From positions 12,834,001 through 12,898,000 of the forward strand of contig OZ249452.1 in assembly GCA_965235115.1 (NCBI GenBank): a DNA stretch of 64,000 bases, given 5' to 3'. Of this stretch, positions 19,801-46,800 are shown in pieces. The notes beneath the pieces are model-generated. The model was given only the letters and a program-made list of their open reading frames with translations. It was not told the DNA's origin and made no database searches. Each line of letters opens with the position of its first letter. The first letter of the stretch is position 1. Made by a program: the position numbers and the translations under genes. Origin of the DNA: Laetmonice hystrix. Taxonomy: Eukaryota.

Positions 19801-22800
19801 TTTCATACTCGGTCAGGCTGGTTCGCGTCTCTGCCCGTTTTTGTTTTTGTGGAACTTTTGGTACGGGTTTAACCAGAGTGGGAGAGACTGGGGGAAGGTT
19901 AGTGTCAGGAAGTTCGGGGGGAGGAGAGACAGAGTCCATCTCCGTGGGTGAAGAGATACGATCGAGATTTTCCATTGATGTTGCTGAAGAACTTGTGCTA
20001 TAAATGGAAAGACACATTATAGGAATGAGTTTAAGGGAAAAAGTGGGTTCGTTAAGCCGCCGTCACACAACATAAAGGATCAAACACTTGGTGAGATATG
20101 AGGAAAACATGGCAACATAAAACTGGTCATATGACATTTCAACATGGTCTTAACATTAACAACACGTGGAATACACCAAACGAAATCAATGCAGGTTGTA
20201 TTTAACACGTTTTAAAGTTCTTACAAAGCGTGAATCTCAAGCACATTATCTTTCACAAATAAATATTCAGAATATTTAGCCCAACTTTCTTGTTTTCTTA
20301 CTTGAAATCATGTGTTTGAAGGTTACCACAATTTAACTTCGCTTTGCTTCCCACTCCAGAAAACAGCTGATATCAAGATAATGATAATTCGTGCCTTTTA
20401 GCTATTCTTACTAACTATACAAAAATACTACTATCTAATGGCCAAGTACATGCTAAACCAAACGTGTATCTTTGAATCTTTGCCAAATTCTAAAAATATT
20501 TTATGCGAAATCATCAAATGATTTATAAGTAGGCATAAATCTAACTGGAACCGAAGTGAATCTATGTAGCAACATTTTTATATGACTCCTCGAGTACAAA
20601 TGATGGTTAATTCCTCCCATAGCTTTCTTTCTATCGGTACTACTCAACACTCTTATCGAAGTCTAATATCTACAACAAAAATCTCTCAAAATCAATTTAT
20701 TCTGGAATTTCTGCAGTTCTACTTCTGACATGCCATGCAGCGTTTGCTGCGAACCTGATTTGTTCTGGACCCATCATAACTGGCCAACTGCTTTGATCAG
20801 AAATGGCGTTTCCATACTGGTCGTATTCTTCGTAATCAGTCGGTGGAACATAGGTTGGGAAAACGTTGAACGTGTCTACTGGGGGACTGGATTGGGAAAG
20901 GTTGTAGAGAGAAACATTGTCAGATATTCTCACCTAAAATATACTTGTAACTTACAGGTATATTTAATTATCCCACGACAAGTTTCCACTTCATTTCACA
21001 AACTATTACAAGACAAAGTGAACCACAAAACCTACACAACAATACAACTTTGAATGAAGTTTACAATAACGGTACAGATTTTACTCATTAATAAAACAAA
21101 GAGTTCCACCTAACAAAGACTTACGGAGTAGGAGTGGTCCTCCTCGGAATGACCAATTTACGTTCTGGTGTCGGTTTACGTGGTGCAGCTACAAACAAAT
21201 AAAAGCAAAAATTTTTTCATTCAAAATAGTCGTTTAGAATTTTCTTAGCTTCTAGAGGAGGGGAAACCGACTGCATTCAGATGTATAACTTCAATCATCA
21301 ACAGGTTTAGAAATAAAACAAACTACATTTTGAATACTTCTCCTCAGCAACTGAATCAATTTCCCTCAAACTGTATATCAAAAATACGTCGCAGTAGGTC
21401 ACACCAAGAGCCTGACCAGTAGTTTTATAGAAGGATCACTCACGTTGCACCATAAGCCTGGCCCTGTTTGACCCTGTGCCGGCCACACTGACAGCTGAAC
21501 ACTGATACCAGGAGCTGTCAGCCGGTTCAGCCGAGTCGATGTAGAGCGATGATTTCCCTTGGTTGGTCTCGATACGATAGTGTGGATGATCCAAGGGTAG
21601 CATCTTCCCATCCTTGTGCCATGACATCATGGGTACAGGCACCCCGACGGCCTCGGCGTGGAACGATACGGGTTCTCCCTCACGGACTGAGGTGTTGGTG
21701 AGGCGTGCAATGAAACGTGGTGGCTGGGCAGCCTCACGTGCTGTAACATCAATTGTTCACATCAGAAAAATATCCCAACACACAAACAAACACACAAACG
21801 TGGTGGCTGGGCAGCCTCACGTGCTGTAACATCAATTGTTCACATCAGAAAAATATCCCAACACACAAACAAACACACAAACGTGGTGGCTGGGCAGCCT
21901 CACGTGCTGGCAACATTAATTGTTCAGATCAGAAAAATATCGCATCACACAAATAAACAAACACACAAACACACATACAAACACACACACGTGGTGGCTG
22001 GGCAGCCTCACGTGCTGGTAACATTAATTGTTCAGATCAGAAAAATATCCCAACACACAAACAAACACACACACGTGGTGGCTGGGCAGCCTCACGTGCT
22101 GGCAACATCAATTGTTCAGATCAGAAAACTACATCGAAACACAAAAACAAACAGCAAGCCAGGGCCGGACCTAGTAGAAGATAGGTGTTTCTACCCCGGA
22201 AATTCGGAGAAAAGTGACCCTTTGACAGGCAGGTGCCCTTTCAAGTTGACATAAATAGGCTTGTAAGCTGAGTGCGGCGCTGAAAGCCTATATCTATATA
22301 TTCTTGTACATGTACTATACACAAAAGGGTTAACTTTGACATTGAGACTTGGTGAGTGAGTTTACATGTGGCATACCTTTAACATTGAGATGAACAGTGA
22401 ACCTGTCCTCTCCGCCTCTGTTCTTGGCGATACACACGTACTGTCCGGCGTCATAGAGTGACACGCGGTCAATGATCAGTGAGTGGATGCCATCCTCATT
22501 CACAACGATCTTGTGAAGGTCATCGTCATGGACCTACCGTTACCAAGGTTACACGGTTATATTTAGCACAAAACAGCATTTGACCTTATATTAACTATCT
22601 TCTTAATCATACCTTTCAATGCAAGCAGACTGAATTCGTTTTGATGCCAAAAGAAGATGAATAGAAATCAAGAGGACAAAATGTTTATTTTTTTCAGAAT
22701 TGTTCCTCACACTTACCCTGACACCATCCCGGAACCAGAAGAATTCTGGAATTGGTCGCCCAGAGACGACTGAGTCAAACCTGACCATCTGTCCCTCTGG

Positions 22801-25800
22801 AGCCTGCTGGTCTGGTGGAACCTGACGGAACACTGGCTTGTAGTACTTCTCTGCTACTCCACCTTTCTCATGTGGTCCTCTCGGCCCTTGTGGGCTGTGA
22901 AATAAACAAACATTTCACAGTCAGGCGCTTGTACAAGTCAAACTGAGCACTAAAAAACTAACTTGGGATCTAGCTCAGCTGCCCAATACATAAAGACAGC
23001 AACTCCAAATTTTGGGCAGAATTGCTTTAATAATTTGGGGGAAAATAAGTGCTAAACAAAAAACATAAAACTCCATTTTCTCAAAAACATATAAAAACGA
23101 CCGATGACCTTGCTGTATTGGTCGCCTGAGTTCTACAACTCCAGGTGCTGCCACCTAGTGTTTGGGATGAGAAGCTTACCTTCTTGTCATCCTTCTGAGT
23201 GTCTCAGGAGCAACATACGACGTGTCATCTATTTTACTAAGTCCCTCTACGTAGAGCTCTCCCGAGGAGATTGCCCGGCCGACTATGTTGGTAGCGCAGC
23301 ACGTATAGTGACCGGCATCCTCGGGGAAGGCGACCCGGATACGGAGTGTGGCGTACCCGTCCTTGGTAAGTTTCATCTCGTAACGGCTAGTGGGTCGGAG
23401 TTGACGACCATTATGGTACCATGCAATCTGTCACAAGTAATGATGATAAACTCTCATTAAAATCAATGCTAACATAGGTTGACTGTTCGCATCCATGGGA
23501 TAGATGTAATTGTGCACTGTAAATGGCTGGTCTAAATTTGTAATTCTGATTCTGATTGGCTGGTCTAAGCAGACCAACCAATCAGAAGCGTTCAGCCTCA
23601 GTTTAACCAAGATTTTAAGGTTTTACGAACTGGGCCAGGGCCCGGCAGACGGCCGTTGAGCTTGAGCTTCAGCTGGGACATGACTGTGAAACCCAAATTT
23701 GAGTTTGAGCCGAGAATCCTGGGCTCAAGCTCCAAATCCTTGAGCTTGAGCCAAGAATTTCAGCTCAAGCTCCACCAAGAAACCGGGCCCAGGACCTTCC
23801 AAAAACGTTCCCCAACCCCTAATTTCATGGAACCCATGACGAAATAACCTAACTTGGATTGGCTGACTTACATTAGGGAAGGGGTTAGCGGCGACTTTAC
23901 AAACAAAAGTCGCGTCTGATCCCTCCATGAGCTGAAAGTTTTGAAGCGGTTGTTCGATCGAGGGAGTTTTGGCGTCTGACAACGGTACGCTATCATCGAA
24001 GGCGCTGCGATCAGCGGCGGCGGCAGGCGGAGGTTGGACTCGGCCTTCACGGTATTGGATTTCTTTCATCAACCGCCGCTCAAACTGTGACACTGTGAAA
24101 TCCTGAAATACACGGCAATAACAGAGGATTTTTTATAGAACTTCGTCATTTTATCTCTTCACTTTACGTGTAGCTTGTAAACAGTTATGCATATCTACCA
24201 ACTACTTCGTCGCCATCTTTCTTTGAATCAGACTTCAAGCGATTGCAAGAGGCAATAATGTTAACGCCAGGACATACATTAAAATGGATTGTCAAGAATT
24301 CTATGCAAATTTCGAAGATTTCCAGACCTGGATTTTATCGCTCTAAAATTCGATAACTTTCCAGCATTTCCATGAACAATTCCCTCCCTATAGGCTGCGA
24401 GAAATCGCTCATTTCTACAAAACTTTCAAACAATCTGTTTCTTTCCATCTATCATCATTCTCAATTGGCCTTCTACTTAGTTATTCATCATATTGATATA
24501 TGTGGACTCTCGGCAATAAAGAGAACTTGCTGAAACCCCCTACCTCGTCATGAGGTGTGTCCTCCACGTCTGACATACGAGCACCAATGGTAACATCGAG
24601 CATACGTTCAGACAGTGGTCTGTAGAACGAGGAAGGCGACTGGCCACGTTTGGGTGTTGGTGGCCGGTCGAGCTTGGCCTCAAGCTCTGAGACGACGGCC
24701 CGTCCACGGTCCTTCTGCTGGGCACGGCCCTTCGACTCTTGTTCTTCACGCAGCCATGCAGCATATCGTTCTGATATAAAAGTTAACACATGAGGCTTCA
24801 AGTTCTTATAACAAAAAACAAAAACAACCAGGACATAACAGCATAGTTGGTTTACATAATTTTACAAACTCTCCTTGGAAAGAGGTGCTTCTTTCGTAAA
24901 TCATTTATTGTAATGTCTTTACGATTTTATTGTGAATTTCTACTTTCAGATATGGGCCTGCTCTGCTATAGGTATTCAATAACGAAAATAATAGAATGAA
25001 ATTATTTTCTAAAGATGAGAATAAGTATTATCAAGCACCCCCTTGGACATGCCCATGGGTATTTGAGTAGATTTTCCTCACCTGGTCCTAGCAGCAGTGC
25101 AGACGTTGAGCACTCTCCCAGACTGTTGATGGCTGTACATGTGTACTCTCCCTCGTCCTCGTCACAAAGGTTGAGAATGGTTAAAGTTGTCGTCCCGCTG
25201 TACTGGTCATACGTCGACTTGTACCTGGGCATACAACAATACTAACCATGTATCCTTGGACTATGGGTGATCATAGCTAGTTATTAAAACCATCGACTCT
25301 TGGTCTCCCTCTTAACACAAAGGTTCAACACTGAAATTTCTTAACCTTTTTCTTACTTATCTCGTTTCCCCCCTGATTTCTTAGCACCGTGATTTGTTTT
25401 GTTGGTCTCCTCACACTTCGAACGGTCAACTACTCCCTAACTTTGCCAAACCCTCACAAAAAAACAGTTTCTCCAATAAGAATTTTTTCCTACATGACAG
25501 GAAGGCTGCTATCCTAAGGTTTACATCCTCGTTTGTGATGGCACTGTTGTATCCTGACTAAACATACCGGGTTTTGTCCACTAGAGGATGCCCTCTCCGC
25601 GTCCACAGGATCTCGGGCGGGGGGAATCCCTGCACCTGGCACTCAAAGTACGCGTTCCTACCGTACGTTAACGGCAGGTTCGGCATTTTCCGGACAAACT
25701 CGGGCGCCACCTCCTGCGGTCGGGGCGGCGGTGGTGCCGGTACCTGTGTGGGCAGAGGTGGGGCCGGCGGCGGCGCAGGCTGGGCTGGCGGCAACGGTCC

Positions 25801-28800
25801 TGCAACATCAGCAGTGGTCAGCAATTCATTCTAACAGTCGTTTCAAAAATACTCGAAAATCTCACAACTTCAAAACAAAGACATGAAATATAGTCTCGTT
25901 ATCTTGACATCAGGGCCAGTTTTTCACCAGTTTATCAAAAATTCTTAACTTGAGTAAAGCTTACTTAAAGGTGCTATTCGTCTCGCACAGAATGGCATTT
26001 CTCCTATCATACATTGTGCACATAGTACTAGAAAAAATTCCTACCGATACCATTGGCCTGATAAACCTTCTATTAGTTTGTGTGCAGCATTTGAAACCTA
26101 TCTCGGTGCGCACCGAGATAGAGCCATTTCCTATGGTGGGGCGTGTCAGGGTCTCCACAGGCCTTCTGAGAGAGCCCCATTTGTGCCGTTATCCATGAAA
26201 AATTTTGATTTCCTTTGTTGTGAATCTATTTCCATGATAGGTGGGATCACATAAACGTCAACAAAATTAAAAATAAAAAAATCGAATTTTTTTTCACGAA
26301 TAGCACCTTTAAGTAAACTAACAGGGTTCTGATTGGCTGGGCCCAGAACACAAGTAAATGAGAAACGCTTACCCTCAACCTTAAGAATCATATATGTGGA
26401 GTTACTGATTCCACTGATTGTGACTGTACACGTAAATCTCCCAGCGTCCTCTGGGAAGACCTCCGATATAACGAGCGTACAGACGCCATTATTATAAGAT
26501 ATCTGGTAGTCGGGCGAGCTTTGAATCTCGGTCTCGTTCCTGTACCATTGGACCCTCTCCGGAACAGGATACGGGGAGATTGTACACTCGAGCACGACTC
26601 TGTCTCCCTCTCGAACAACTATGTCTGCCAGAGGCTGGAAAATCAACAATATTTAATCAATTACAATGGGTTACCAAAACATGGAAAAGTTTGGTTGGTT
26701 TGTTAATCTGTTGTTTTGTGATCCCGGGAACCAATTTGTTTGGATAACTGAGGTCCGACCGTATTCTTCAGAGTATTCGTTTTCAATATGAACTTTGACA
26801 AAAATAGTTTCCCCACCAAAGAAATAGTTTCACAATTCTCTCGCAATGAATTGAAACGAGCCTCCTGTCAAGGTAAGTTACATTTTAGTCCTAAAAATCC
26901 CAGACCTTCTACTATAGAGCAAAAAGGTTAAAAAATGCCCTCATTCTATTCCATGAAATATTTGTCAAACACTCCCATAAAATCCACCCAAAATTCACGG
27001 CGGGGGATACACCTCGTTTTGAACCTTTGCCGGAGGGGTACGGGGTGGCAGTACTTACCCTTGTGAACTGCGGGGGAGGTGGTGGCGGCCTCTGGGGGGT
27101 AGGAGCTTTAGGCGGAGTTGCCTCGCGGCTTGAACCGCTGGTGAATGGAGCAGCGTGTTGTCGGAACGGTAACCGGTCTGGTGAAGCTCCGATAGACGGG
27201 CTCCGTGACACGGGAGGAGTGGGTGAGGCTGACTCGTCAATGGCTGATGGTGCTGGAGGAAGGACAACGACATGACAAAAATTAATTCTGATTTGGGGAG
27301 AGATTTGTGACAGATTCGTATGGGAAGAGGGTGCAGGGAGAGTTGTCTGCAGACACTGGTGATTTCATGACATGGGTTTGTCCAAAAACACCACCAAATT
27401 ATTTTGTCATCAGAAAATGGTGACTGTTAGCATCCAGTCATGAGACCAAATATACTTTCAAATTTCCACCCAATCCAAATTTCTAAGAAACAGGGGGGTG
27501 TTCCTTATCCTTATCTCCAATGTATTTTCAATGGGGATTTTAACGCACGACATGATAACGACAGATGAGGAACGCACCCCAGAGTCGGTAATCAAATCTA
27601 GAGGTCACACAGAACGCTTCATTTTGACCTTCAGTCCCAACCAATGTTGACAACAAGAGTTTATGGGACTAAAAACGGCCAGAAACTGTTAGTGATGTCC
27701 GCCTAGTGATAACCCGGTGCTGCCCTCTCGCGTTGACTATGTGGCGGACGTCAGCAGAATTCCTCCATGTCTGATTAGATAGCCCAGACAGACAGATAGG
27801 CAGACAGACAGACAGTCCCACACCAAGGAGACATCTTGGTCCATGAGCAGGTTCCTAACCCATATATCCTATCACCATCCCCCTAATGATCAGGTTGTTA
27901 TGTCTCTATGGCAGGTAAAAATACTATTAACCTCCATTTCTCCCCCTATTTTTATGTTTCTCCTAATGGTACTAAAGTTACCTTTTTTGGATTCCATAAA
28001 GGTTTACCATTTGGCCACCTCTCCAATTTTCTCAGGTTCATGCTACCATAATTCTCACAGAACCCATAACTGAGGTTTTTACCTCGAATTACGATCACCC
28101 TTGAACACCCTCACCACACAAGGTGGGAACGGGGTCAGATATCTGAGCAGGGCTCAACCCTTTTATCAATCACTCACAAATATCTCAATTTACCCCCTTG
28201 CCATCGCCCCCTTGTAATCTCCAGGGGGGTGAGCCATCTCTCACCGATGAGTGGCCTACTGGAGGTATGCTGGAGACCGCCCGGTGTGACTCACTGGAGA
28301 ACTCACTGGAGAAGTTATGTCTGATATGGGACCAGGTCACACCCAGCTTGGAGTCAGACAGAAAGTTCAAACATTGTTCGACCTGTACTCCGTTATCTAC
28401 TTGTGTTGAACTCTTATATTCCTGCTCCAAATTCCTAGATTCGACCTCATCTAAAGATAGTGTTGATTGCCAAGTAAAGTAAGAATACATGACTGATAAG
28501 TATGGGGCCTGCACCCTTCAAATCCCCCGATGTCTGGCCTTCAATATGGACTCTCCGAGTGTCTGCGTGCCCACACATCCTGATTTGCTGACATTGTATT
28601 GACCCATCTTGGCTCAAAGATCTAAGCATCTTTCAATTTAAAAGTTATTACCCCCTCTCTGCAGGTTTGACAGTTGAATAAGAAACCCTGATTTATAGGT
28701 CAGAATCTTCTGTTTGTCTGGGCCTGCTGGCGCCCTCTGGTATAGACGCAGGTAACTACCGTAACTCGAACCCCGAGCAGGTCCGAGGAGGCCCGGATAG

Positions 28801-31800: not shown

Positions 31801-34800
31801 TAGGAGTCACCAGGTAATGGTGTGATTATGCCGTCAGACATGACCTGGGAATCATCACCGCCTGCTTACCCCGGCGTCCCCGCCCCCTCTCATCCCTGGC
31901 AGGAAGTCAGGGTGACCCCCCCCCCCCCCAGCAGCTGACCAGTCACCCCGTGAACCCTGACCTGGTCATGAATCAGTCTGGGCAATTTTTAGAAATGTAT
32001 CCATTCCAGCCAGATATATCATACCAGAACTCCCCCTCCCGAGTTGGACGTTGGGTTTCACAATTTATATGTACCAATTTCCATCCTCAATTTATTTGGA
32101 TTACTTTGGAGCGGGTGGTTTCACCCCTGGTTTTCCAGGCAGATTTCCATTTAGGTTAAGTTTTGCTTGGTGCCGTAAATCCATTGTGTTGATCAGAAAG
32201 TGTCTGCAGAAATTCAGCCCTGGAAGAGAACGCTGCATCCAATTCCAAAGCAAAGACGGTAACCACACAACACACAACTGCGAATAACTCCAAGCAATGA
32301 TCCTAGGCAGCAAGAGAAAGTGAAGCGTCAGAAGAAACGAAGATTTCCGGCAACACCAGCAGGCATCTACCATGAAACTAAATCTCTTGAAGACGCAGAT
32401 ATTTTAATAGTACTCCACTGAAGAAGGCGAGAAGAAAGTAGTCCGGCCAAAGGATATTTACCCTCAACAATGAGTTCAGCGGTACATTCTGTGGTCCCTG
32501 CTGGATTGGTCGCTTTGACTGAGAATTTCCCGGAATCCTCATAGAACACCTCTGGGATATACAACGTGTGTACATCTCCTTCCTGTATGATCTCAAAGTC
32601 AGGTGAGCTGACGATTTGTGACCCTTCACGGAACCATGTGACCTCCGGAGTGGGTTTACCGGCGACCCGGACTGTGAATCGGACCGACTCGCCCTCTTTG
32701 ACCTCATGAGATCGGAGTCTCTCTGTGAAGTGTGCTGGAACCAACGACGCTGAAACAACAAAAAACAACAATACTCATTAACATCCACTCAGTAAACATA
32801 CTCCTTTTTTATTTTGTATTATTTAACAGTCTATGTTTCAGAATCAATTATGTTTTACAATAGTACTTTTTTTCATGGTTCAGTTCAATTGTTCTAATAC
32901 AAAGCAGTCACAGTCAATATCAGCCTTGTCACTCAATAACTCATCTTTTGATGGAACAAAGAAAAGTTTTATTTAATGTTTAACATTAATCACTGTTGGT
33001 TTTCTAAGGCGGTCATCCTCCCTGAATATAACCAATGAGTAAGCCTATAGCAAACAACCAATAGGTAACCCTGTAGCAAATCTGTCATTATTTTAATCCA
33101 TCAATTTATCGCTATGCCCTACTGGCAGTGGCAGCTGACGGGTGGATACATATGAATATTCCATTAATCCTCCTCACCCCCACCCCCACCCCCACACATC
33201 TCTCAGGTTCTATTTGGGGTGTTATGAGCCCGGTGATAGAAAGGGAACGTCAATGACGAGTTGCACAGCTGAGCTCAACATATCATCGCCATCCCCTCCT
33301 TCCGATGAGGATGAGAGACGCAGAATCCCACTCCCCGCCTCCCCAGACGCCAAACGTTTTTTCCCCGACTGATAACCTTTTCAAAGACCTGGCGTCAGCG
33401 AGTTACGATATAACACCAGGCGTATCCTGTGTCCGATCCAAATATTATAAAAGGCGCTTTTCCTTGCGACGCCCACGCGATTTTGATATCACCTTTTTAT
33501 TTTACTGTAATTTTGAGATTAAAGGATGGAACCCACTTCCTGAAATGGGGAAGGCCACCCAGGAAAGATTTCAGAGTGAAATTCCACCATTAAATTAAAA
33601 ATCGGCTTAGTAGATCAGGCTTTTTTTGATAAAGGCGTTTCTAAATATTGTTTCCCTAAGGAATGCATTATCAACGAGTTAATAGCAACATTTTCGTTTT
33701 ACCCCCCGGATCATAAACTCCTCAGTTTGCCGACATATTGGCGACGCGACATCACCGCCGGTGGCGCGTGCATGGACACGTGCACCCACCGCGTCCCGTT
33801 GTGGAGGACGCTGCCCGGCGCACGTGGCCACATTCCTGACAGCCGGTAGAATCCACAACTCTTACCGCTGTCCCCTCCCTCTCCCTGCAGGCATCCACTG
33901 ATACAGACACTCTCCTCCTAGTTCCCAGAAGTTGGCACAGCCCTGCTGCCATCAATGCGAAAAAAGGGAGAAAACGGAAAAAACAGGAATGTAGATTCCC
34001 AGACTTCTTGTGGTCTGTGCTGCCTGTCGCGTATCTCCGTAGTTACTGCTAGATCAGCAGAAGTCCTATAAATAGAGTTTTTTTTACTGATTTACTTCCG
34101 GTCCCTTCATCAGTGACACATGAGGAAATGTTACTCATTCTCAAATCAAAACTCCTTGCCACTTGCATCCTCCCATAATCTTTCCAAAAAAAAACTACAT
34201 CAAATTTCGGCAAAATACGTCAAATTTCGGACCGATTCTTCCCTTTTTAAACTTTAAAGAAAACATATGGCAAGGACTCCCCTCCCCATATCGAAACTAG
34301 GAGAGTATCTACAAATATTACCCGTTTATTTATTGCCATAGCCCTTCAAGACATTTGGCCATGATGATGTTTTGATACATCTCTACAATTTTCACACTCT
34401 TCTGCTCCCCACGTACGCCATAGTTTTCGCTGTGAATCGTCTCCTTCCCTTCCCCTTACCCCGCCGCTGTGCCCGTATAATTTGTTGGATGGCGTTTGAA
34501 GTTGAGACAAGAAAATCTCATGTTACCAAAACCCGCGCCTAAAATACTAGAGCTCAGTGAACGGTACCGGCTGCATATACCAACAGGCCATTGACGCATC
34601 TAGATCTAAATACAGAACTCATCTCTCTAAAGTAATATATAACCGCTAAACTTGTGAATTATAACTTACCCTAAGATCACTAATAACCAAAGAGTATTAA
34701 GTGTATTGTTTTCCGGAATAACCACTTCTAGGAAGAATTCATGCTGGATGAACTTTGCCTTTCCCTCAGCTTGGTTGGGGGTAACATGGCGGGTAACATG

Positions 34801-37800
34801 GACAAAATGCCGTTCAGTCGTTGAGATTCGGACAAACATCTAAATTGTCTCACCTGATTCAAACCTCTCCTCTGTTTTCACGCGCTTGTGATACCTGAAG
34901 AATCCCAATGAATCGCTATCCATTTTGAATTTTGGCTACTCCGCAACAACGAAACGAAAATTGGGGAAGCGTTTCTCAAAGATGGCCCATGTCGACTGGC
35001 AGAATCTGACTAGCTTCTGACGAGAATCACAGCATGCCGGGGGTCCATACCCCTCGGGTTATTTTTAGCCCGCCCCTATCTCCCTACCGAGTGAATACAG
35101 TGGCTATGGAAAGGACTTGCTATCCATGTTCCCGGGCCACGTTCCGATGCGCCGCGGCCCGGGATGCGGCATCAAGTGGGATCAGGTTAGCTATTGGTGG
35201 GTTGAGTTGCCATGGCAACAGAAGACCACTGCGGAGGTACTTCTAGGATGATTCGTGGAGTCTGAGACAGTTGGGGGTGTTTATGCTTGCGTTGGTAGGG
35301 CGGACAAGAGGGTCAGCGTGTTGGATGGGTGAGGGTATACACCTGATAGACAGGCCCGGGGGGCAGCCCCCCATGCCCCCCGGGGTAATTGTCTTGTGGG
35401 CCAGCCTCCAGATTTACCGTGCCAACCTTGGGCTGTGTTTATATTGACACCAGACTCGAGGCAGGTGTGGCCACGATCCCTGTGCCACACGTATAGGGGG
35501 GGGGGATTGGGGGAGGGGGTAGGGACCTTCTTGAGGCCAACCACGACATCAGCCTCCTGTGATCCATCCACAGTGTCATGGTGATTCAGATTAGGTAACC
35601 TTAGCAACGGATCAGCAACCAGACCGATCCGCCCTCGGCCATTTCACAAACTTTACGGTAATCACAAAATACTGCTGACGTCTTCAAGTCCCTACCAGAC
35701 AGATTACTCACCGATATATTATTCGTAGAAAAGTTGAAGATTTTGTTCCAGTGTGTCAGCATTACTTCAACTAATATCACGGTTCACCAGAAAAATAATC
35801 AAAATATAAATTTAAATCTGACTACTCAAATCCACTACGCTTTTTAAAAGGATATACATGTACTTGATTTCAGAAAAAAAAAAAAGACCCATCCCTTATA
35901 TTTATGCATTCAGCGTAACACAGACATAAAACCGAATTAAAAGAAAACAGTACAGTGGTACCACATCGGCAAATAATCCCTCATAGAACCCAAAAACATT
36001 GGCAGGAACTTGCCAGATTCCTTCCATCTCAACCTCCGTTAATATTGAGTGAGTGATTGGTGCTTTCACGCCTTGTCGGCAACCAAGGCCATCCTCAGCC
36101 CAGGGTATGATAGGACCTCCCCCGTCCTGTACATACACCCAGGTGAGTGTCTCATAAACACCCCAGGGTTACTCCCGGAATGCTGGAACCAGGTGATGGT
36201 GCGGTGGTGGAGATCCTTTCTCTGGGCTGACTCAGAACAATGGGGACACGTTCCTCCAAGCAAAGGGCCACACCTTGCCTCAGTTCTATGTCCGTCATTG
36301 ACATTGATTGACACATTCGGCGGGCCTTTGGCTTGCAATCGTCCAGCCTGCCGGCCTTTGTCCGCCTTCTGAAAGTTCTGGAGTAGGTTTTGCGTCTCTC
36401 AGAACCTACTCCAGACCCTACCATCACATTCTTCCACGACCCCACCACGGGATTCTTCCAAGACATCAGAATCTTCCAAGACCCTACCATCAGAATCTTC
36501 CAAGACCCCACCATCAGATTCTTCCAAGACCCTACCCTCAGATTCTTTAGCTGGGAATGAGAGAATTCCAAAGATATGAAAGCAGCCTCCACCCTCCCCA
36601 TCCCTCCAGAACGCACGCATACGATGCCCCAGGTACACTAACGGAATCCCCACAGATTCCTTCGCGAGTTTTATACCTATTGAATTAAAAGTAACGCTGG
36701 AAACCATTTGACGATGAAAACACTTTTCTTTATCATCCCATCTAACTTTAGGATTTTGCGCAGTGGCTGTGGGAGTTATGTAGAGGGACATTATCATGGT
36801 ATACAGACCAGCTCTGGCAGCTCTCCCCCCGCCCCCCTCCCTCCGTACACCTGCGAACTATCCGTCGGTGCTGGCTGCTTGCTAACATAGCTATAACGTC
36901 AACCGTACCCTTGGTTCACCGTTAACTGGGTTAGCTCAACGTTTGCCGGCCTCCCGTCCCATCCACAGTGGGTACAGTCAAAGGGATGACGCCACACGCT
37001 TGGAGTACTTTTTACTCAATGGTACTTAGAGCCAGAATGAGAAAGTTTAATCTTTTTGTGTGATCAAATGAAAATATATACAGTCAGATAAATATCCTCT
37101 CTCAGCATTCCAAACACTTTACCGATAAATGACAAACTCCTGGAACTTAGAGCTATTTACTTGAGATTTATTTTTACGATGATGAGGAAGAATCTGAAGA
37201 TGTATAAACTAAGATCAAATGAAACCAACCCAGTTTAATCAAGGATGTCTAAACCAAGTTGTTGCAGGTATCACAACATCAAAATAAAGAGTCTAACCAG
37301 AGGTTCTGTTATCCGGAAACAATCAACACCCCCTGTCCTCCAGTGTGACGTAAGTCCCTGGAGGGACAGACCACTGTCAGATGCAATATTCCTCCAGTAA
37401 GGGACCCCCTCCTCCAGTCTCTCAGTCTACCTGCGCAGTACGCCCACCCGTCAACGCCAACAAATCTTTACACACACATCTACCCTCTGGTCCCTCTCAA
37501 TATCATAAACATTTTCTTTCACCGTATCTCGGAGTTCTATAAACATCATAACATAAAAATAGAGACTATGGAGTCTATTTTGTAGCCTTACACGTTTTTT
37601 GTCAGTGTTTCCTGTCTCAACTTTTCTGGTGAAGAGGTTTCCAAATTTATAGTGTACAGTATAAAGCTGTTGGTGTACTGGAAATCTGGCATGATCCATT
37701 ACATATACCTTGGTGTCGGAACATCTGGCGAGTCGAAATGTGAGGTAGCTTCATGGGGAACTTAAACTTTTTGTTTTTGTCAAGTTTCACACCCACTGAT

Positions 37801-40800
37801 TGATGGGCCCCAGGTAAAAACAAGGAATCATAATTTTGTCTAGAAGTTGAGACCGCCCAAAGAGGCTGAGATCGGTTCAGAAATGCTCTACAGTTTCATA
37901 TTTTACTGACGCAAACCGTTTTTAGCATTTACTAAAGTACACAAGACTATATATCACATTTGAGTTACATGCCGAGTCATATACTGACAATTTACCTATG
38001 GGGTCACAGGGCGAACTTATACTGAATCTATAGGTCTCTGTACAACAGACCCCTTGGAAACGCACCTGTGGCATTGCATGGGGAAAGGTTAATAAAATAA
38101 CTATTCCGGTCTACCAGATGCCACCCCCACTGCCACCTGTACAACTGCCTCCATCCCAGACAGATCAGTCACAGGCTTTAGATAAGTCTATTTGAGTTCG
38201 CTGACATCAAGACGTTTTACTGTCCACAATAACAGTCGGGAGTCTGGGCATCCACCAACAAGGCCCGTAGCCAAGGGGGGGAGCATACAGCCCCTCCTCA
38301 AATTTGAGAGAAAAACCATTTTTCATCAATTTATATCTTTGTTTTCTCCATGGAAACATCTAGAATTCTGAAAGTATTTTTAGTTTTCCTCCTCCCCAGG
38401 GGGTGTGAAGCTCAGGCTGATGTTTCAAGGCCTGCCATCAGTTTGAATCATCCTAAAGGGCATTAGACGTATTACAGAGGCGAAGCAAACCGGGGAAAAA
38501 GGCTAGCCAATTCATACTCAGAGCAGTCGCCAAACACTACCTGGCTCGAAAGTGTACAACGGTTTCCAACCCCGGCAATTTATAACTAATACACATGTCA
38601 TATTTTACCAATTCCTTGAAATATTGTGTTGGAAAACACCCACACTCTTTTTCTGCTTTCCTACTAAACCATTAAATTCGATTTAATTCCTTAACCTACC
38701 CACCCCCCGAGGTGAATCAAACAATATCTCAAATACAACAGTGAGTAATTAGACTGACTGTTTAAGATTGCGTACAGGTGGCTTTATTCATCCAAACTTC
38801 TTTCTTGACTCTACATAACTCAATCATCTTATCTTCCTCTGCCCCTACATATTTTTTGGCCGCCGCAGATAAAATGTCATCAGTCGGTGGGGCCTGTTGG
38901 CCACCTCGCCAAAACTGAATGAAACTTCTTTCTGGGTCATATAACTAATGGTTTCTGGGTCATATAACTAATGGCGTGTTACTATTTTGTCAGAATATGT
39001 TAGTAAATGGTTATTACTAAATGGGCCTGTTGTTATTAAAAATTGGACACATCTGAGGGAGTTAAAAAATAGGCCTGTTGTTGTTTCAAATTGGGTACAT
39101 CCGGATCATTTTTTATTTCTGTGATTACAAAATGGACACATATTACAAAAGGGGTCGATTATTTCAGAATTAGCCCGAAAATAGCCTTCTCTTCCGGCTG
39201 ACTTGGGACCAAGAAACCTCATTCTGTTTTCATGTAGGACTGACTAAGCAAATGTGATTAATTTAACCCTTTCATCTGATAATGATAATGATAATATTTC
39301 AGTTGGGTGATATTTCCTCTGATTTCCATTAACTTTGATAACCAGCAGGCCCCATATTTCACCCCCTCCCACTCCGTTCACTGCTGACTCTGCACGTATT
39401 CCTCCTGTAGGCTCTCAGTATCACCTTACAAATCTCAAAAACCGGCTCCTACTCTCCCCGACATGCCAACAGAAATAAGTTCCATGTTTACTACTACGTC
39501 TCAGAAACCGACCCAGGCACACACAAACATTCATCTATTGTGCCAGCTGACATCGGCGACAGAACTTATTCCCCACCAAATGATTTTATGTTTTCCTTTT
39601 TTCTGTTTTCAATTTTACCAGGCCTAAGGAATTTTCTTTTCGTGCGTGAGGTCTTCAGATATTCACTATATATTTTGTGACATATTAAGGATCCATTTTT
39701 TAGTGCATTTATTGCGCCATTCCCCCTAATAATCAACACTTCTGCGTTTTCCTTTTTGTGCACCAAATTGGAAAATAACTTAACCTTCAGTGCTGAGTTC
39801 CTCTATCGATGACGCTCAGGCCTGAGAAATTTGATTCTAATACAGCACGGAATCAAATTATCAAAGGTCCAAAGACCCGATGAAGGGAAATCGACTCCCT
39901 TTGTTTCTGCTAGGATACACGGGTTCGTGTAAAGGGCCGTATCCACTAAGCCCGCCGGCGCCCTTATTTTGACACTATATGTAGGAGTTTGTGTAGGCCA
40001 TAGTAAACAAAAATCGGAAAATTATATATGTGCTCATAAATTAGGTTGCGTGTACTCATTGTAATGGGCCCAGCTACACCCATTCATTTTCGGAATGGGC
40101 TGACCGGCCGACCGGATAAGGCCCTTTAATCAAAGACTATCCTTGTCAGAGACAAATGTTCATGTTAGGAACAAATGTTGGTGTTAGATACAACTTATCC
40201 TGCCAAGTACCAATTTCACGTCCATGACCAGCTCTAACATATTCCATGAAATACACCAGCACCTGACACATACAGCGATATCTTATCAATCTGTCGACAT
40301 CACTCCCACCCACGCAGCCTCCCTACACCCCCTACCACCCCACACCTCTCAGGGCAGACCAGAGGGGTGCATACTCTCACCCTGAGCTCACGCCCCTGAC
40401 CCCATCACGTGTGGGGTACCTGTATTACCCCGTTAATCTCCGTGACAGACCGGCACACCCCGAGGAGGTGTTTTACACAGATTATCCCTTAGTTAGCGAT
40501 CATGTGTCCACGGCCGACACCCCTGAGGTCAAAGGGTCCCTGACCCCGAGTTTCGACCCCTGATCATTCCACCTCCAGTCACCACCTTATCTACACATAT
40601 TACCGATAATTCCCTGATATAATGAACAGAACACCAGGTCTAATACTGAGGATGATAAAGGGACGATAACTGAGTATTCCTACGGGAAATACGCAGCTAT
40701 ATCACAGTGAGGTCCATGAAGTTTTAGTTTTTCAAAATAAACTGGTCGCTTCTAAGAACGTTTTCCCGTTATTTTTACGGTTGAACTTTTTGGGGGTCCA

Positions 40801-43800
40801 TCTAAACCATGACACACACGAAAAGGCATATTTGTCAAATAAATATCATAACAGTTTTAATACCAAAGCAAACTTCTGACAGCACGCCTTCTCCAGAAAT
40901 GCTGACTCTGCTCCTTTCATGTTGATAACACTGTTTCGAGTTTTTGACGTCTTTGTACCTGTGGGCCACCGTACCTTCTCCCACAACCAGGCTCGGATTT
41001 GGTCCCGGGGGACTAATCACGGAGCATTGGGCAGAGGGCCCAGAATAGCGCGTACCTCTCCTGAACACGTGTAGGTCCATGCCGGGTTAACACCACCCAC
41101 CTGTTCACGGGACTTTCATGTCACAGTCATCACTCTAGGGAAGTCAACATCCTGAACACCCTGAACAGTTTATAAAATCACATGAGTCCATGCCACCGCA
41201 TTCTGCTGGATGCCAAGGTAACGCAGAGGATGGTGTCACATGTAGTAACTACGGTACCTCATAGGATACATTACAGGTTTTAGTGTGGCTGAGGCTTGGT
41301 GCAGGTTTGGAAACTGCACATCAAATTTTATATCATGATGTTTCCAGCCGACCGGGTGGTACACTACAAGAGGATACTCGGACCTTCAAGTGAGAAGCGT
41401 TATCAGTCTAAAACGACTTGCTTTGACCTTGAGGATCTTTGGGTCATGCCTCACTCAAGTTAATCACTGAAGTTCATCCTTTAAATATATTACCTTTCCA
41501 CTTTACTATCAGAAACTCCTGAGTTTGTTTTTTAAGCCAAACGAGGACATATTTCATATCCCGTGGCTCCAACAACTCTGCTGAAAACAAGCCATTAAAA
41601 CTGTCCTGGTGGTACACCATAAACACAAAGTGCGTTCTTTTATCACCATGGCAATGTCCATCGGAGCCAGTTGGCAAGGATTCATGTTAGGTGTCTGGCA
41701 AAACACAGAAAAAAATATAGAAAAAGTAGGAAGGTTAAGAAAACGTCGTATTGTTTGGAGATCATGCTTTGACTTGGTGAAGGTCCAACTCTGGGCCCTG
41801 CGCCATGGTCGTCGTATAGGTGGGTTTTATACGAGGGGGAGGACAAAACTCCTGTCTACATGACATGTTGCTATGACAACAGCGTCCCTCATCGTCTGGA
41901 AGACATAAAGAGCCACCAGCTTGCCAACGCCTTTTTTCTAATGTCTGCTTCTTTTGTTTTGTTTTGTTTTGTTTTGATCCAGGTAGTGTAGGAGGTATGG
42001 ATAATTTTTGTTTTGTTTTTATCTAGGAGGGTTGGATAGTTTTTGTTGTAATATTTTTATTTCAGGTTATCGCTAGATGTAATAGCACAGTCCAGTAGAG
42101 AAATGGCCGTTATAACACACAGCCATCCAGTACCACCGCCTGGTACAAGTACAGCACTACAAGAACAACACACAGTGCTCTATTTGTGCGTTGTTCTCTC
42201 TCACAGCCAGGCATGGAGGAATCGGCCTCAACCCTCCAGCTCTTACACAGGAGGAACTAATCCCTCTCGCAAAGTGGCAGAATCCTCCAGTATGTCCGGA
42301 TGATACCGCAGAGTGCTGCTAACAACGTCACCACTATGTCCGAGGTGGCCCGGCCGGTGCGTGTCGGTCACCCCGGGCCGCCGGGCCGGTTCCCCCCGGT
42401 CTGCCGGTCGGCGGGGCAGACTGCCTCCTACTACCGCTGCCATATAAGGGACACCCTCCTGGGACCGCCATTACTATCTATCCCCCCGGGTTTTTCACGC
42501 TGCTGTCGGGAGGGCGACTCTCCCGGCCGGGGTAGACACCCTCCGCCGGCCCGACCCGGCCTGGCTGCCCGGTCCGTGCGGCATCCCCTCCCCGTGCTCT
42601 ATTTCTAGAAGGGATCAAGTTAACCGACGGGCCTGGTGGTGCAGGGGGAGGCGTGCCATGATCCTCAGGTCGAGATAGACCATAGCTTCTCTCTCTCCCA
42701 ACCACCCACCACAAACACGAGCCAACAACACGGCACCGAACACTAAAATAACATACTGAGCCGACTCCAGCGCCACCTCGTGAGCCGTTTAGTCTTGGGT
42801 GGTTCCAATAAATTTATCATAATGCCAAGGGACTTGTTGATTCTACCTCCATTTGATTGAAGATCGGAGTCACCTGTCCCTCTGTGTTGCCATTAGGAAG
42901 CCAGGGATAACATTTCACTCTTGTACTTTGTACATAAACTTTGAAACTAGAGATACTTGGAACCAGTAAATGTTCCTCTCTGAAAGATATGAGTGTCGGA
43001 GGAACTTCATCTATATTTTTCTGAACAGATTAAGAATGTTCATCAGAAAAATTATTCACGGGATCATTCTGAGAAAAAGTCCTTTCTGTATAAATATATT
43101 TGTAATTGATTTATTCATTTGTCATCAGAAGACAGAAATACCAATTATTATCAACCTTCATGAAGTGATTTCTACAATTCCTTTTACCTAGATCTACCTG
43201 CCCAAATCACCATCTTCTTATCTTTTATAACTAGTCGTTGATCTGCAATGTGTGGATGGTCATGGAATGCTAGAATTCCTGTTATCACAGTTTATGTATA
43301 GCTCAGTATGTTCACACCACGGCTTCATCCGTCACTCAGTCGGAGAGGCCAAGAAAGGATCTCGTGCTGCCACCTAGTGGGTATGAAGATCATTACTCTT
43401 CATAACGCTCTGCTGGTATTTTTATCTGACCCGATAATCTGAACTACTTCTATTCACAGATTTTGTATCCAGAAATTATTTAGGGATGGGATTGAGAGCG
43501 TAACTCATCACCGGAGGTTTTACAGTCTAGTTCTCCCTCAATAACACCATCGGAATATAATATTATTTGGGGGGGGGAGCTCTCAAGGGTCTCCGATGCC
43601 CTTGCTGGAGATTCACCAACTTTTTTGCTGGAGATTGGGGTTCAATGCTGGAGATATAAGGACACTTAAAACACTCCCGCGAAATGCGCGAGACTTGGTG
43701 GGTGGGGGGGGGGGGGGGGGTTAGCCCCACTTGATTTGTTTCTGCTAACCACATGGCATCAGTAACTGATGACTAAGGACCTTTGAAGAAATTGGTGTCT

Positions 43801-46800
43801 CACGCCTTTAAATCTTCGACACGTCTCATCTTCAACCCTCGGCAATGTCCGTGGATTTCCGGCCTTCGGAAGGCATTCATTTGATTCATTTAATCGCCGC
43901 TTGGGGGCCAGTGTACTCAAGGCCTATAAACAGCAGAGGTTCTCGTGGCTACGTTTGTCTGAGGCTACAGAGCTGCCACCTGGTGTTTACAGACATAATC
44001 GGTTATTGGTTGTTTGAGGGACTGTCGGTATTATATCCTCTGACACAAACAGTCACTTCACTTCTGGTGCATGGGACTTTGCAATTGCATGCGCCTGTAA
44101 CCGGGTATAGGCGCATGCTCACCTATAGGCGCATACGCCTAAAAGTGCATCAATACTACTTGGCAAATATCTCAGTATTTCACAGCAAACACGGAACACA
44201 ATATCCACGAGATGAAAAAAAGTAGAATGGTGTCAGACAGTATGACTGAGACAAATTGTCCAAATGAGAAAACTGACAAACATTTTGACCACTGACCTGA
44301 TATTATCTGATATTTGGATAATTGGAAATATTGGCCAATTAAATTAGCAATAACAAGTCCTTCCTGCTTTAGTACCACTTTTACTATACTACTTACTTAA
44401 CAGGAATTTTATCCTATAAAAGCGTTCAAAACCCCACTTAAATACCCTGGACTTTTACTTACGTTTTGGTGATTTCCAATTACATTTTTATGAGAAACGT
44501 TGCCACAAAATGTCCCAAGAACTTCCTTCTATTAACCCTACGATTTAATTTAGAATATATCTCAGACTTTTACTTCAGACGTTTTTGTCCAGTTTCTCCA
44601 TTAGACCATTTATTACCGAACCATTCCGTCAGAGCACCATGACCCACACAATGTTGCTTACCTTTGACGACAAGTTCAGCCGAGCTGCTGACTGTCCCCG
44701 CGATGTTCTTCGCTTGACACTCATATTTCCCACCGTCCTCCTCGAATACTTCCGGTATCGTCAGTGTGACTCGCCCGTCCCGGAACGTAATCTCAAAGTC
44801 GGCACTTCCTGTGATCTCGTGTCCCGACTTGAACCACTTGATGGTTGGCTGTGGTTTTCCTGAGGGATAGGAATGAGATCCATAATGGCCTAATGAATCC
44901 AAATATAATATTAAAAACAGAAATTGCTACAGATGCAGTGATCACGAAACGAACCACTTCGAAAGGTTATAATTAAACCATCAGAGAAATGGTAACACTA
45001 ACAAAATATCATAAAATGATTGTAAATTTTTCCTTCAACTTACCGTCGTCCAGACCGCCTTGGAAGATCACCTTGGTGCCCTCCTGGGCTGTGATGTCTT
45101 TGATCGGCGCCACAAACTTAGGTGGAACAGGTAGTTCCACGTGGAGGTCCATCTGAGGGAACTTTGGCATCTGTAGTGGTTGTGGCGGCCCCGGTGGCTT
45201 CGGCGCTGGTGGTGGGGGCGGTGGTGGGGCCACGTATGGCTTCGGTTGTGGTGGCGGTTCTGGCTTCGGTGCCGGTGGTATATATGGCTTCGGTTGTGGT
45301 GGCGGTTCTGGCTTCATCACCGGTGCCGGTGGTGGTGGTGGTGGCACGTATGGCTTCGGTTGTGGTGGTGGTTCTGGCTTCATCACCGGTGGTGGTGGTG
45401 GTGGCACGTATGGCTTCGGTTGTGGTGGTGGTTGTGGCCTCATCACAGGTTGTGGTGGCGGTGGAGGTGGTGCCGCAGCGGCAACAGGTGCAACCATCAC
45501 CGGTGCGATAGGTTGCATCGGTGGTGGTGGTGGTGGTACGTAGACCGGTTGTGGCTTTGGTACAGGTACCACCATTGGTACAGGTTTCTGCACTGGACGC
45601 CCTCCCTGATACACCAAAGAACAAAGATGGTAAAGAATTAGCCTGTTTTTTTCTCTATCGGCTCCGTTCTCTTTACTTGCAAAGGCCTACCGCAACAGGA
45701 AGTTCAGCTGAAATATGTTATCTAAAGGCTAAAGGGCCTTATCCAGACATAAATAAGGTACCTAATATATGAGCACATACAAGAATATGTTTTTCTATTT
45801 TTGTTTACTATGGCTTACACAAACTCCTACATAGTGTCAAAATTATGGGGCCAGCCTGCTGGCCAGCTTAATGGATACGGCCCTTTAATACACATGTGTA
45901 TCAGAGGTCGAATGGACAATTTAAAATGTGCAAATTCATAAATATTATTATTTAGTTTACATGAAATTTTCATATCACCGTATCTATCATAAACATGAAA
46001 TATGCAATCACTAAAACAGTTTAGTTTTCCATACTCACACTAGGTGGCGACGGCGGCTTGGGTGGCGCTGCCGACTCGTCGACAACAACCAGAAGAGCTG
46101 CACAGGTCGCTTTGCCCGATTCGTTCTCAGCCGAGACAGAGAACCGTCCAGCGTCCTCATCAAACACCTCTGGGATGTAGAGACTGTAGTTGTCTCCAAA
46201 CTGTTGGATCTGGTAGTCTGGAGACACTACCGGCTCACCACCAAAGAACCAGCGTACCTGACAACAGGAGACAACATTCTTGCTTCAGTTATTTTCATCA
46301 GACGTTTACACCGCCTTACAGCTGATGTGTAACTTTGGCTGGTTCGAAATCTCGGCCATTGAGATTATCAAATAAAATTTCAAACTTCAAAAATCTAAGG
46401 GGGCGCCCCCCCCCCGATCTCCACTTGCAATGGTACCATTTCATAGAGCTACAGCCCTGGGATTTCCAGTTTTTTGTTGTTTTTTGTTTAAATCGAATCC
46501 CCAACATTACACTGTTATTGACACCTAGTACTTGCCCAGGAGGCACTGCCCCCCCCCCGATCAGTAATGTCCACCAGCCTGAACTCACCCTGGGTTTGGG
46601 GTTACCCGTGATGACAACCTCAAACTTGCACGAATCTCCAGCCTTCACTCTCATGTCACCAAACAACTTCTGGAACTCTGGGGGTCTGTGCCCCACGCCC
46701 ACAGTCGTCGTGGTTACTGTCTTCTGTAACATGTGAGAGGACTCCACGAGTCTGGTCTTCACGAAGTGGGACTCCATGGAAGGCTTGACAATCAGGGTCG

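What the first reader, a model, noticed from the sequence alone, without database searches (positions are those of the whole stretch)
20697..44661. A palladin/myopalladin-like protein may be nested in this titin locus (internal promoter plus internal last exon)
Seen: Ig8 (FTERLRSHEVKEG...SSPDFEIIQEGDVHTLYIPEVFYEDSG), Ig9, polyproline linkers, the SQFERRLMKEIQYR motif and Ig11-13 (EKYYKPVFRQVPPD...EG; HKIVVNEDGIHSLII; WYQCSA...ARL) form a contiguous block. The block is preceded by the longest intron of the window (32750-44661), which holds CArG and MEF2 motifs. It is followed almost immediately by a stop-containing exon (20697-20886). Established (from memory): vertebrate myopalladin/palladin are 2 Ig, a Pro-rich region, then 3 Ig, with SFEQRLMNEIEFR and ERFFRPHFLQAPGD...EG, and they end just after the last Ig. 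Inference: internal start plus internal stop would yield a free palladin-like actin/Z-disc scaffold from within the titin gene, hinting at how the palladin family arose. I could not identify an in-frame ATG-bearing first exon.
Basis: partly seen in the sequence, partly recalled or inferred. Interest (0 to 1): 0.8.

Follow-up and report, generated by a model that had tools for sequence, protein, structure and literature searches.

The report
Ordinary titin Z-disc region, palladin-like by ancestry
The "palladin-like" block is the normal front (Z-disc) part of an invertebrate titin gene, matching vertebrate titin domains Z2 to Z7 one for one; it looks like palladin because palladin is an old relative of this titin segment, and nothing shows a separate nested gene.

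Summary

The block is not specifically palladin-like. Ig7 to Ig13 match vertebrate titin Z1 to Z7 one for one. This holds by best-hit scores for Ig8-Ig13, by a domain tree (Z7 clade 98/94, Z6 100/99), and by three linker motifs. The two "palladin" motifs (SQFERRLMKEIQYR, EKYYKPVF) are also present in bat and lamprey titin, before Z5 and Z6.

Palladin Ig2, Ig3 and Ig4 fall in or next to the titin Z3, Z5 and Z6 groups. The resemblance therefore reflects ancient paralogy, and the genome has no separate palladin gene.

The first 69 nt of the "stop exon" (20886-20818) are a conserved internal cassette exon that splices in frame to 19997. Only read-through of its donor would reach the TAA/AATAAA. 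That tail has no detectable homologue and is the kind of open stretch chance gives about 14% of the time.

CArG and MEF2 sites in the long intron are no more frequent than chance, and there is no CpG island. No RNA data exist for this species, so a short isoform ending at 20.7 kb is neither shown nor excluded.

Verdict: ordinary titin/sallimus-type Z-disc region; the nested palladin-like gene is unsupported.

The parts
45056..45686 (-). Open stretch holding a Pro-rich PEVK-like repeat, followed in frame by the first half of Ig7 (titin Z1). Donor after 45056.
   Evidence: The junction 45056|44859 scores best against homologues.
44662..44859 (-). Second half of Ig7 (Z1). The exon ends in phase 1.
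   Evidence: PDB best single stretch is titin Z1, 1ya5 residues 27-100. Groups with the Macrostomum and Saccoglossus domains that occupy the Z1 position.
32750..44661 (-). Intron of 11.9 kb between Z1 and Z2. It holds an interspersed 154-nt repeat at 33451-33604, one CArG box and two MEF2-like sites.
   Evidence: Motif counts are not above chance. Z1 and Z2 abut in every homologue.
32462..32749 (-). Ig8, orthologue of titin Z2. Single exon, phase 1-1.
   Evidence: Residues 97-196 of 1ya5 at 147 bits. 50-51% identical to residues 103-194 of the bird and bat titin proteins P0036 and P0035. Best score against Z2.
27059..27211 (-). Ser/Pro-rich linker exon between Z2 and Z3. The 5' boundary is uncertain. 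No Z-repeats.
   Evidence: tblastn with bat titin residues 195-940 finds nothing in the window.
26373..26634 (-). Ig9, orthologue of titin Z3.
   Evidence: Best score against Z3. The Z3 clade has support 89/89 and also holds palladin Ig2.
25568..25799 (-). Poly-proline linker plus the first half of Ig10 (Z4).
25082..25224 (-). Second half of Ig10 (Z4).
   Evidence: Z4/Z8 clade 96/92.
24544..24770 (-). Charged linker exon between Z4 and Z5. The donor is uncertain (24606, 24579 or 24544).
   Evidence: Weak match to Macrostomum P0015 residues 2746-2795.
23872..24092 (-). Alpha-actinin-type motif SQFERRLMKEIQYR plus the first half of Ig11 (Z5).
   Evidence: The motif aligns with bat and lamprey titin and with tuna palladin. 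This exon is the best genome-wide hit of the palladin motif plus Ig3 start.
23219..23427 (-). Second half of Ig11 (Z5). The donor is uncertain.
   Evidence: Z5 clade 80/78.
22717..22894 (-). EKYYKPVF motif plus the first half of Ig12 (Z6).
   Evidence: Bat titin has ERLYKPVF and palladin has ERHFRPHF at the same position. Junction.
22377..22533 (-). Second half of Ig12 (Z6).
   Evidence: PDB best single-domain hits are myotilin Ig1 and palladin. The Z6 clade including palladin Ig4 has support 100/99.
21444..21740 (-). Ig13, orthologue of titin Z7. Single exon, phase 1-1, donor GTGAGT.
   Evidence: Z7 clade 98/94, with no palladin domain inside.
21125..21188 (-). Microexon of 64 nt (…PTPERKLVIPRR…), phase 1 to 2, donor GTAAGT. 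Conserved post-Z7 linker.
   Evidence: It matches PEPERRLIIPR after Z7 in bat titin and the same motif in the flatworm, crinoid and hemichordate homologues.
20818..20886 (-). Cassette exon of 69 nt, phase 2-2 (…FPTYVPPTDYEEYD), donor CCA|GTATGG. Conserved internal linker exon.
   Evidence: It matches TVPSYVQPETYSDDE in Saccoglossus P0011 and in the transcript P0179. It splices in frame to 19997.
20696..20817 (-). Read-through of that donor: 39 more codons, TAA at 20699-20697 inside AATAAA at 20701-20696, with a U/GU-rich stretch after it. A possible but unproven intronic polyadenylation site.
   Evidence: No homologue was found. An open run of at least 39 codons occurs 14% of the time in this gene's introns.

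Best explanation
The interval is the constitutive Z-disc-anchoring N-terminal segment of an invertebrate titin/connectin (sallimus-type) gene, transcribed from the minus strand. Ig7 to Ig13 are the orthologues of vertebrate titin Z1 to Z7.

By homology (inferred, not tested):
- The Z1Z2 pair anchors the filament end.
- The SQFERRLMKEIQYR helix before Z5 is an alpha-actinin EF-hand-binding motif.
- The Z5-Z6-Z7 group is an actin / Z-disc scaffold module.

The animal has no vertebrate-type Z-repeats and no separate palladin gene. This titin segment is therefore the only detectable counterpart of palladin.

Palladin, myopalladin and myotilin look like it because they descend from a partial copy of this same segment (about Z2-Z7, including the motif). 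The exon at 20886-20818 is an internal cassette exon of the Z7-Z8 linker. The stop and AATAAA behind it lie in the following intron and are reached only if that donor is skipped.
For: Shown:
- One-to-one best scores of Ig8-Ig13 against bat titin Z2-Z7 (238, 194, 165, 234, 219, 161).
- Domain tree with UFBoot/SH-aLRT support: Z7 98/94, Z6 100/99, Z5 80/78, Z3 89/89, Z4/Z8 96/92.
- PDB best hits are titin Z1 and Z2.
- Three linker motifs are conserved in position with vertebrate titin: SSFEERLIKEIEYR before Z5, ERLYKPVF before Z6 and PEPERRLIIPR after Z7.
- Homologues are collinear in flatworm, hemichordate and crinoid proteins and in two transcript contigs.
- Good GT/AG sites keep one frame from Z1 to 19997.
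- The echinoderm-like transcript P0179 and the hemichordate model P0011 continue past the TVPSYVQPETYSDDE motif into further Ig domains, and transcript P0118 also continues past Ig13.
- Palladin queries find no other locus in the genome.
- The literature finds no palladin-family gene outside vertebrates, with titin-like proteins as the best hits there (PMC5479843).

Inferred: the binding functions, from homology with titin and palladin motifs (PMC8163081, PMC5479843).
Against: - No RNA data for this species, so constitutive inclusion and the donor at 20818 (GTATGG, weaker than its neighbours) are predictions.
- Z2 placement in the tree is weak (37/0), and Ig7 scores higher against Z3 than against Z1.
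- The stop codon overlapping an AATAAA, followed by a U/GU-rich stretch, is what a real poly(A) site would look like.
- Only one vertebrate palladin and no myopalladin or myotilin were in the tree.
Confidence: 0.8

Rival explanations
1. Composite terminal exon. In some tissues the donor at 20818 is skipped and the transcript is cleaved after the AATAAA at 20701-20696. This would give a short titin isoform that starts at the usual gene start and ends about 40 residues after the Z7 linker. It is compatible with the main explanation.
For: - The frame stays open for 39 codons after the donor and ends in a TAA embedded in AATAAA, with a U/GU-rich stretch behind it.
- The donor GTATGG is weaker than the neighbouring GTGAGT and GTAAGT.
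- Short N-terminal titin isoforms made by reading past an Ig exon donor exist elsewhere: transcript P0179 has 1516 aa, its own ATG at Z1 and about 850 nt of 3' UTR. Drosophila zormin and kettin are further examples (PMC2963174, PMC12198301).
Against: - No homologue of the tail.
- The open length is expected 14% of the time, and AATAAA occurs 0.61 times per kb on this strand.
- Another follow-up reports a conserved early-stop exon about 12 kb beyond the window, which would already provide the short isoform (not tested here).
- No RNA evidence.
Confidence: 0.15
2. An internal promoter in the 27-44.6 kb introns, together with the 20.7-kb stop, yields a free palladin-like protein (Ig8 or Ig9 to Ig13) nested in titin.
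For: - Domain order and motifs mirror palladin.
- The genome lacks a separate palladin gene.
- Titin-type genes are known to use internal starts and stops.
Against: - CArG and MEF2 sites in the long intron are at or below chance, and there is no CpG island.
- No ATG-bearing first exon has been identified.
- The apparent internal start of P0118 is a gene-calling artefact: its frame continues upstream through another Ig domain.
- The tail lacks the palladin-family C-terminal motif.
- The model needs two unproven events at once.
Confidence: 0.05

Closest known systems
Vertebrate titin/connectin Z-disc region (Z1-Z7)
   Same: Same order of seven Ig domains. Same three linker motifs at the same positions. 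Z6 and Z7 abut directly. A CCDC141/zormin-like spectrin-repeat part lies upstream on the same strand.
   Different: No 45-residue Z-repeat array between Z2 and Z3. Z1 is preceded in frame by a Pro-rich repeat and six further Ig domains, rather than being the N-terminus. Identity is only about 40-50%.
Invertebrate titin-like genes (Drosophila sallimus with zormin and kettin isoforms; Saccoglossus and Macrostomum titin-like models)
   Same: Collinear from the spectrin repeats through Ig1-6, Z1, Z2 and onwards. The layout was published as 'connectitin' (PMC12198301). Nested short isoforms are a known feature of this kind of gene.
   Different: Arthropod zormin-type proteins diverge after Z2 into unique sequence plus one Ig domain. 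This gene keeps the full Z3-Z7 block, as deuterostomes do.
Palladin / myopalladin / myotilin family
   Same: Palladin Ig2, Ig3 and Ig4 group with the Z3, Z5 and Z6 clades (Ig4 inside Z6, Ig2 in the Z3 clade, Ig3 next to Z5). Both have an SSFEQRL…EIEFR-type alpha-actinin motif before Ig3/Z5 and an ER.F/Y.P.F motif before Ig4/Z6, and the last two Ig domains abut.
   Different: - Palladin-family proteins are separate genes in vertebrates.
- They end about 50 residues after the last Ig domain with an acidic …DDL tail.
- There is no Z4 equivalent, and Ig5 does not join the Z7 clade.
- Here the block is internal to a giant gene and is as close or closer to titin than to palladin.

Membership tests
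Titin/connectin (sallimus-type) Z-disc segment | N-terminal tandem Z1-Z2 Ig pair | tested here: met
   PDB best stretches are titin Z1 and Z2. Ig8 is 50-51% identical to residues 103-194 of the bird and bat titin proteins P0036 and P0035. Tree support for the Z2 grouping is weak.
Titin/connectin (sallimus-type) Z-disc segment | Collinear one-to-one orthology of the following Ig domains with Z3-Z7 | tested here: met
   Diagonal best scores. Clade supports: Z3 89/89, Z4/Z8 96/92, Z5 80/78, Z6 100/99, Z7 98/94.
Titin/connectin (sallimus-type) Z-disc segment | Conserved linker motifs before Z5, before Z6 and after Z7 | tested here: met
Titin/connectin (sallimus-type) Z-disc segment | Z-repeat array between Z2 and Z3 (vertebrate titin) | tested here: not met
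   tblastn with bat titin residues 195-940 gives no hit below E = 1. Only a Ser/Pro-rich linker of about 50 residues is seen. The invertebrate homologues also have only short Z2-Z3 linkers, so this affects 'vertebrate-type' status only.
Titin/connectin (sallimus-type) Z-disc segment | Part of a giant multi-Ig gene on one strand | tested here: met
   Ig exons lie on the minus strand from C29:12.43 to 12.89 Mb. Further Ig exons and long open exons lie downstream in the window.
Palladin/myopalladin/myotilin family | Ig domains nest within the palladin-family clades to the exclusion of titin domains | tested here: not met
   The window's domains sit in clades that hold the titin Z domains. Palladin Ig5 is outside the Ig13/Z7 clade. 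Only one vertebrate palladin was sampled.
Palladin/myopalladin/myotilin family | Protein ends shortly after the last Ig domain with the acidic C-terminal PDZ-binding motif (E-S/T-D/E-D/E-L type; PMC5479843 gives ESEEL for myotilin) | tested here: not met
   The hypothetical read-through tail ends …AEIPE. Tuna palladin ends …ESDDL.
Palladin/myopalladin/myotilin family | Alpha-actinin-binding motif before Ig3 | tested here: met
   Present, but equally present in vertebrate titin, so it does not discriminate.
Palladin/myopalladin/myotilin family | Independent transcription unit (own promoter and own 3' end) | not testable with these tools
   No RNA run holds this locus. Motif and CpG scans give no promoter signal.

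The most novel reading that the evidence does not exclude
In an animal without a palladin gene, skipping of the weak donor at 20818 and cleavage at the AATAAA at 20701-20696, possibly combined with an internal start, produces a short Z-disc scaffold that ends just after Z7. This would be a living analogue of the precursor from which the vertebrate palladin/myopalladin/myotilin family was copied out of titin.
Probability: 0.12. Interest if true: 0.55.

Novelty: new member of a known kind. Interest (0 to 1): 0.28.

Why it matters
As a gene feature this is ordinary: another invertebrate titin with a conserved Z-disc end.

The useful by-product is evolutionary. The five-Ig architecture of palladin, with its alpha-actinin motif and its pre-Ig4 motif, lines up with titin Z2/Z3, Z5, Z6 and Z7. 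That block predates the split of protostomes and deuterostomes. This supports the idea that the palladin family is a partial copy of the titin Z-disc segment. It also explains why no palladin homologue is found outside vertebrates.

I found no paper stating this module-level collinearity. The connectitin paper does not mention palladin. The general kinship of palladin-family and titin Ig domains is long known (PMC2169455, PMC5479843).

Tried and rejected
- **RNA evidence:** two searches for sequencing runs found only three runs of one study that also hold the introns, so presumably DNA.
- **Conservation of the stop-exon tail:** a homologue search with the 78-aa open frame found nothing. The 81%-identical relative (P0001, ENA ERZ26222911) has no retrievable DNA.
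- **phmmer with Ig13 against 1.84 billion representatives:** the ranking was dominated by summed scores of giant Ig proteins and was not directly informative. The returned proteins were reused for local BLAST and trees.
- **P0118 as an internal-start transcript:** rejected. Its frame continues upstream through a Z2-like Ig domain.
- **P0180 as an internal-start transcript:** set aside. It is an intronless 5.3-kb genome-assembly contig with flanking Ig-bearing open frames.
- **The crinoid 'myopalladin-like, partial' model ending after Ig13:** rejected as evidence of a stop. It breaks off inside the conserved post-Z7 microexon.
- **My early guess of about 70% identity to human Z2, implying a vertebrate:** wrong. 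Identity is about 50%, and the nearest domains in the tree are from a flatworm and an unidentified transcript.
Full report
**Anatomy**

Junctions were chosen by frame, GT/AG sites and similarity to homologues. The resulting exons are:
- Ig7: 45686-45056 plus 44859-44662.
- Intron: 44661-32750.
- Ig8: 32749-32462.
- Ser/Pro-rich linker ending at 27059.
- Ig9: 26634-26373.
- Poly-Pro linker plus Ig10: 25799-25568 plus 25224-25082.
- Charged linker starting at 24770.
- Motif plus Ig11: 24092-23872 plus 23427-about 23219.
- Ig12: 22894-22717 plus 22533-22377.
- Ig13: 21740-21444, donor GTGAGT.
- Microexon of 64 nt: 21188-21125, donor GTAAGT.
- Exon starting at 20886.

One reading frame can be carried through all of these.

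**What the block is**

- Sequence searches against solved structures give titin Z2 as the best match of Ig8 (1ya5 residues 97-196, 147 bits) and titin Z1 for Ig7.
- A phmmer search with Ig13 returned giant Ig proteins. Local BLAST against them and their names show collinear homologues:
  - a Macrostomum giant Ig protein (57-64% identity in Ig12);
  - Saccoglossus titin-like;
  - a crinoid 'myopalladin-like, partial' model;
  - lamprey titin-like;
  - bat and bird titin, where Ig8 falls exactly at residues 103-194.
- A score matrix gives a clean diagonal: Ig8-Ig13 match best to bat titin Z2-Z7 (238, 194, 165, 234, 219, 161).
- An IQ-TREE analysis of 75 domains recovers these groups:
  - a Z7 clade containing Ig13 (98/94);
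  - a Z6 clade containing Ig12 and palladin Ig4 (100/99);
  - a Z5 clade containing Ig11 (80/78), with palladin Ig3 next to it (83/74);
  - a Z3 clade containing Ig9 and palladin Ig2 (89/89);
  - a Z4/Z8 clade containing Ig10 (96/92).

**The motifs are not palladin-specific**

- The motif before Ig11 aligns with bat titin (SSFEERLIKEIEYR), lamprey titin and tuna palladin (SSFEQRLISEIEFR). By my count on that alignment, the window shares 10 of 14 positions with titin and 8 of 14 with palladin.
- The pre-Ig12 motif EKYYKPVF is ERLYKPVF in bat titin and ERHFRPHF in palladin.
- After Ig13 the microexon carries PTPERKLVIPRR. This matches PEPERRLIIPR after bat Z7 and the same motif in the flatworm, crinoid and hemichordate homologues.

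The block is therefore the bilaterian-conserved Z1-Z7 region of titin. It lacks vertebrate Z-repeats.

**Relation to palladin**

- They hit vertebrate titin in the same way for Ig1-Ig4. Palladin Ig5 scores highest on Z3.
- The window's domains score as high or higher against titin than against palladin.
- Genome-wide searches with palladin Ig3-5 and with the palladin motif plus Ig3 start find only this gene and other generic Ig arrays. The best hit of the motif is the window's own exon.
- This agrees with PMC5479843, which found no myotilin homologue outside vertebrates and titin-like proteins as the best hits there.
- The simplest reading is that the palladin family is a partial copy of the titin Z2-Z7 segment. 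Seeing this does not require a nested gene here.

**The 'stop exon'**

- Its first 69 nt (20886-20818) encode …FPTYVPPTDYEEYD. This is the counterpart of TVPSYVQPETYSDDE in the Saccoglossus protein and in the transcript contig P0179, both of which continue into further Ig domains.
- The donor CCA|GTATGG at 20818 leaves phase 2. The acceptor at 19997 takes phase 2 and continues an open Pro-rich linker.
- Only read-through of that donor gives 39 more codons, then TAA at 20699-20697 inside AATAAA at 20701-20696, followed by a U/GU-rich stretch.
- Base rates: an open run of at least 39 codons occurs at 14% of positions in this gene's introns, and AATAAA occurs 0.61 times per kb.
- No homologue of the open frame was found.
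- The tail ends …AEIPE, unlike the …ESDDL end of palladin.
- A real intronic poly(A) site remains possible but is unproven.

**Internal promoter**

- CArG boxes: 3 in the window against 5.6 expected, with one in the long intron.
- MEF2-like sites: 15 in the window against 6.2 expected. Only 2 lie in the long intron, about its share by length.
- There is no CpG island.
- The intron contains a 154-nt high-copy repeat.
- No RNA run exists for this species.
- In other animals:
  - P0179 (SRR27871380) starts with its own ATG just before Z1 and has in-frame stops upstream. It ends after the eleventh Ig domain by reading past a donor. Short N-terminal isoforms therefore exist, but with other boundaries.
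  - P0118 looked like an internal start, but its frame continues upstream through another Ig domain.
- An earlier follow-up on this genome reports a conserved early-stop exon about 12 kb beyond the window's start. I did not test it.

**Upstream context**

- The region 64-54.5 kb encodes spectrin-type repeats (DUF7799, Spectrin_7, Spectrin).
- It is followed by six Ig domains and a Pro-rich repeat that runs in frame into Z1.
- The layout is collinear with the N-termini of the Saccoglossus and Macrostomum models and with arthropod 'titin homolog / unc-89-like' isoforms.
- This is the zormin/CCDC141-like part of the 'connectitin' arrangement published in PMC12198301.

**Verdict**

The nested palladin-like gene is unsupported. 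The evolutionary hint is reasonable, but it applies to titin in general rather than to this locus.

Noticed in passing
window 54500-64000 (minus strand) and 46000-53400: Spectrin-type repeats (DUF7799, Spectrin_7, Spectrin) followed by six Ig domains lie upstream of Z1 on the same strand. They are collinear with the N-termini of the Saccoglossus and Macrostomum titin-like models and with arthropod zormin-type isoforms. This is the CCDC141/zormin part of the published 'connectitin' arrangement (PMC12198301).
   Followed up: partly
window 45100-45686 (minus strand): A Pro-rich PEVK-like repeat (units like PPPQPKPYVPPPPPP, about five copies) is open in frame with the first half of Z1. All three frames are open here, so coding status is unproven. 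An ATG (MDLHVELPVPPKF) sits just before Z1, at the position where transcript P0179 starts its protein.
   Followed up: partly
window 33451-33604: An interspersed repeat of 154 nt inside the long intron. At least 45 scored copies are 82-95% identical on many contigs, with 1799 first-look candidates.
   Followed up: no
whole window: MEF2-like consensus YTAWWWWTAR occurs 15 times against 6.2 expected, and none of 100 shuffles reached 15. The sites are spread over the gene, not concentrated in the long intron.
   Followed up: no
L004 (Logan SRR27871380 contig, 5592 nt), 195-4745: A transcript from an echinoderm-like animal encodes a 1516-aa short titin isoform. It has its own ATG just before Z1 with stops upstream. 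It runs through Z1-Z7 plus four more Ig domains, then ends by reading past an Ig exon end (…KVQG ALSETESL stop) with about 850 nt of 3' UTR.
   Followed up: partly
G000:C29:21078000-21089400 (minus strand): An uninterrupted open frame of 4153 aa made of Ig repeats gave the top hits to palladin Ig3-5, at about 30% identity. It may be a kettin-like or other giant Ig gene.
   Followed up: no
L005 (GCA_014845345.1 contig JACSEG010001098.1, 5270 nt): An intronless open frame of 1253 aa covers the equivalents of Ig9-Ig13 plus four more Ig domains. It sits in a genome-assembly contig with Ig-bearing open frames on either side. It could be a processed copy or cDNA carried into the assembly.
   Followed up: no
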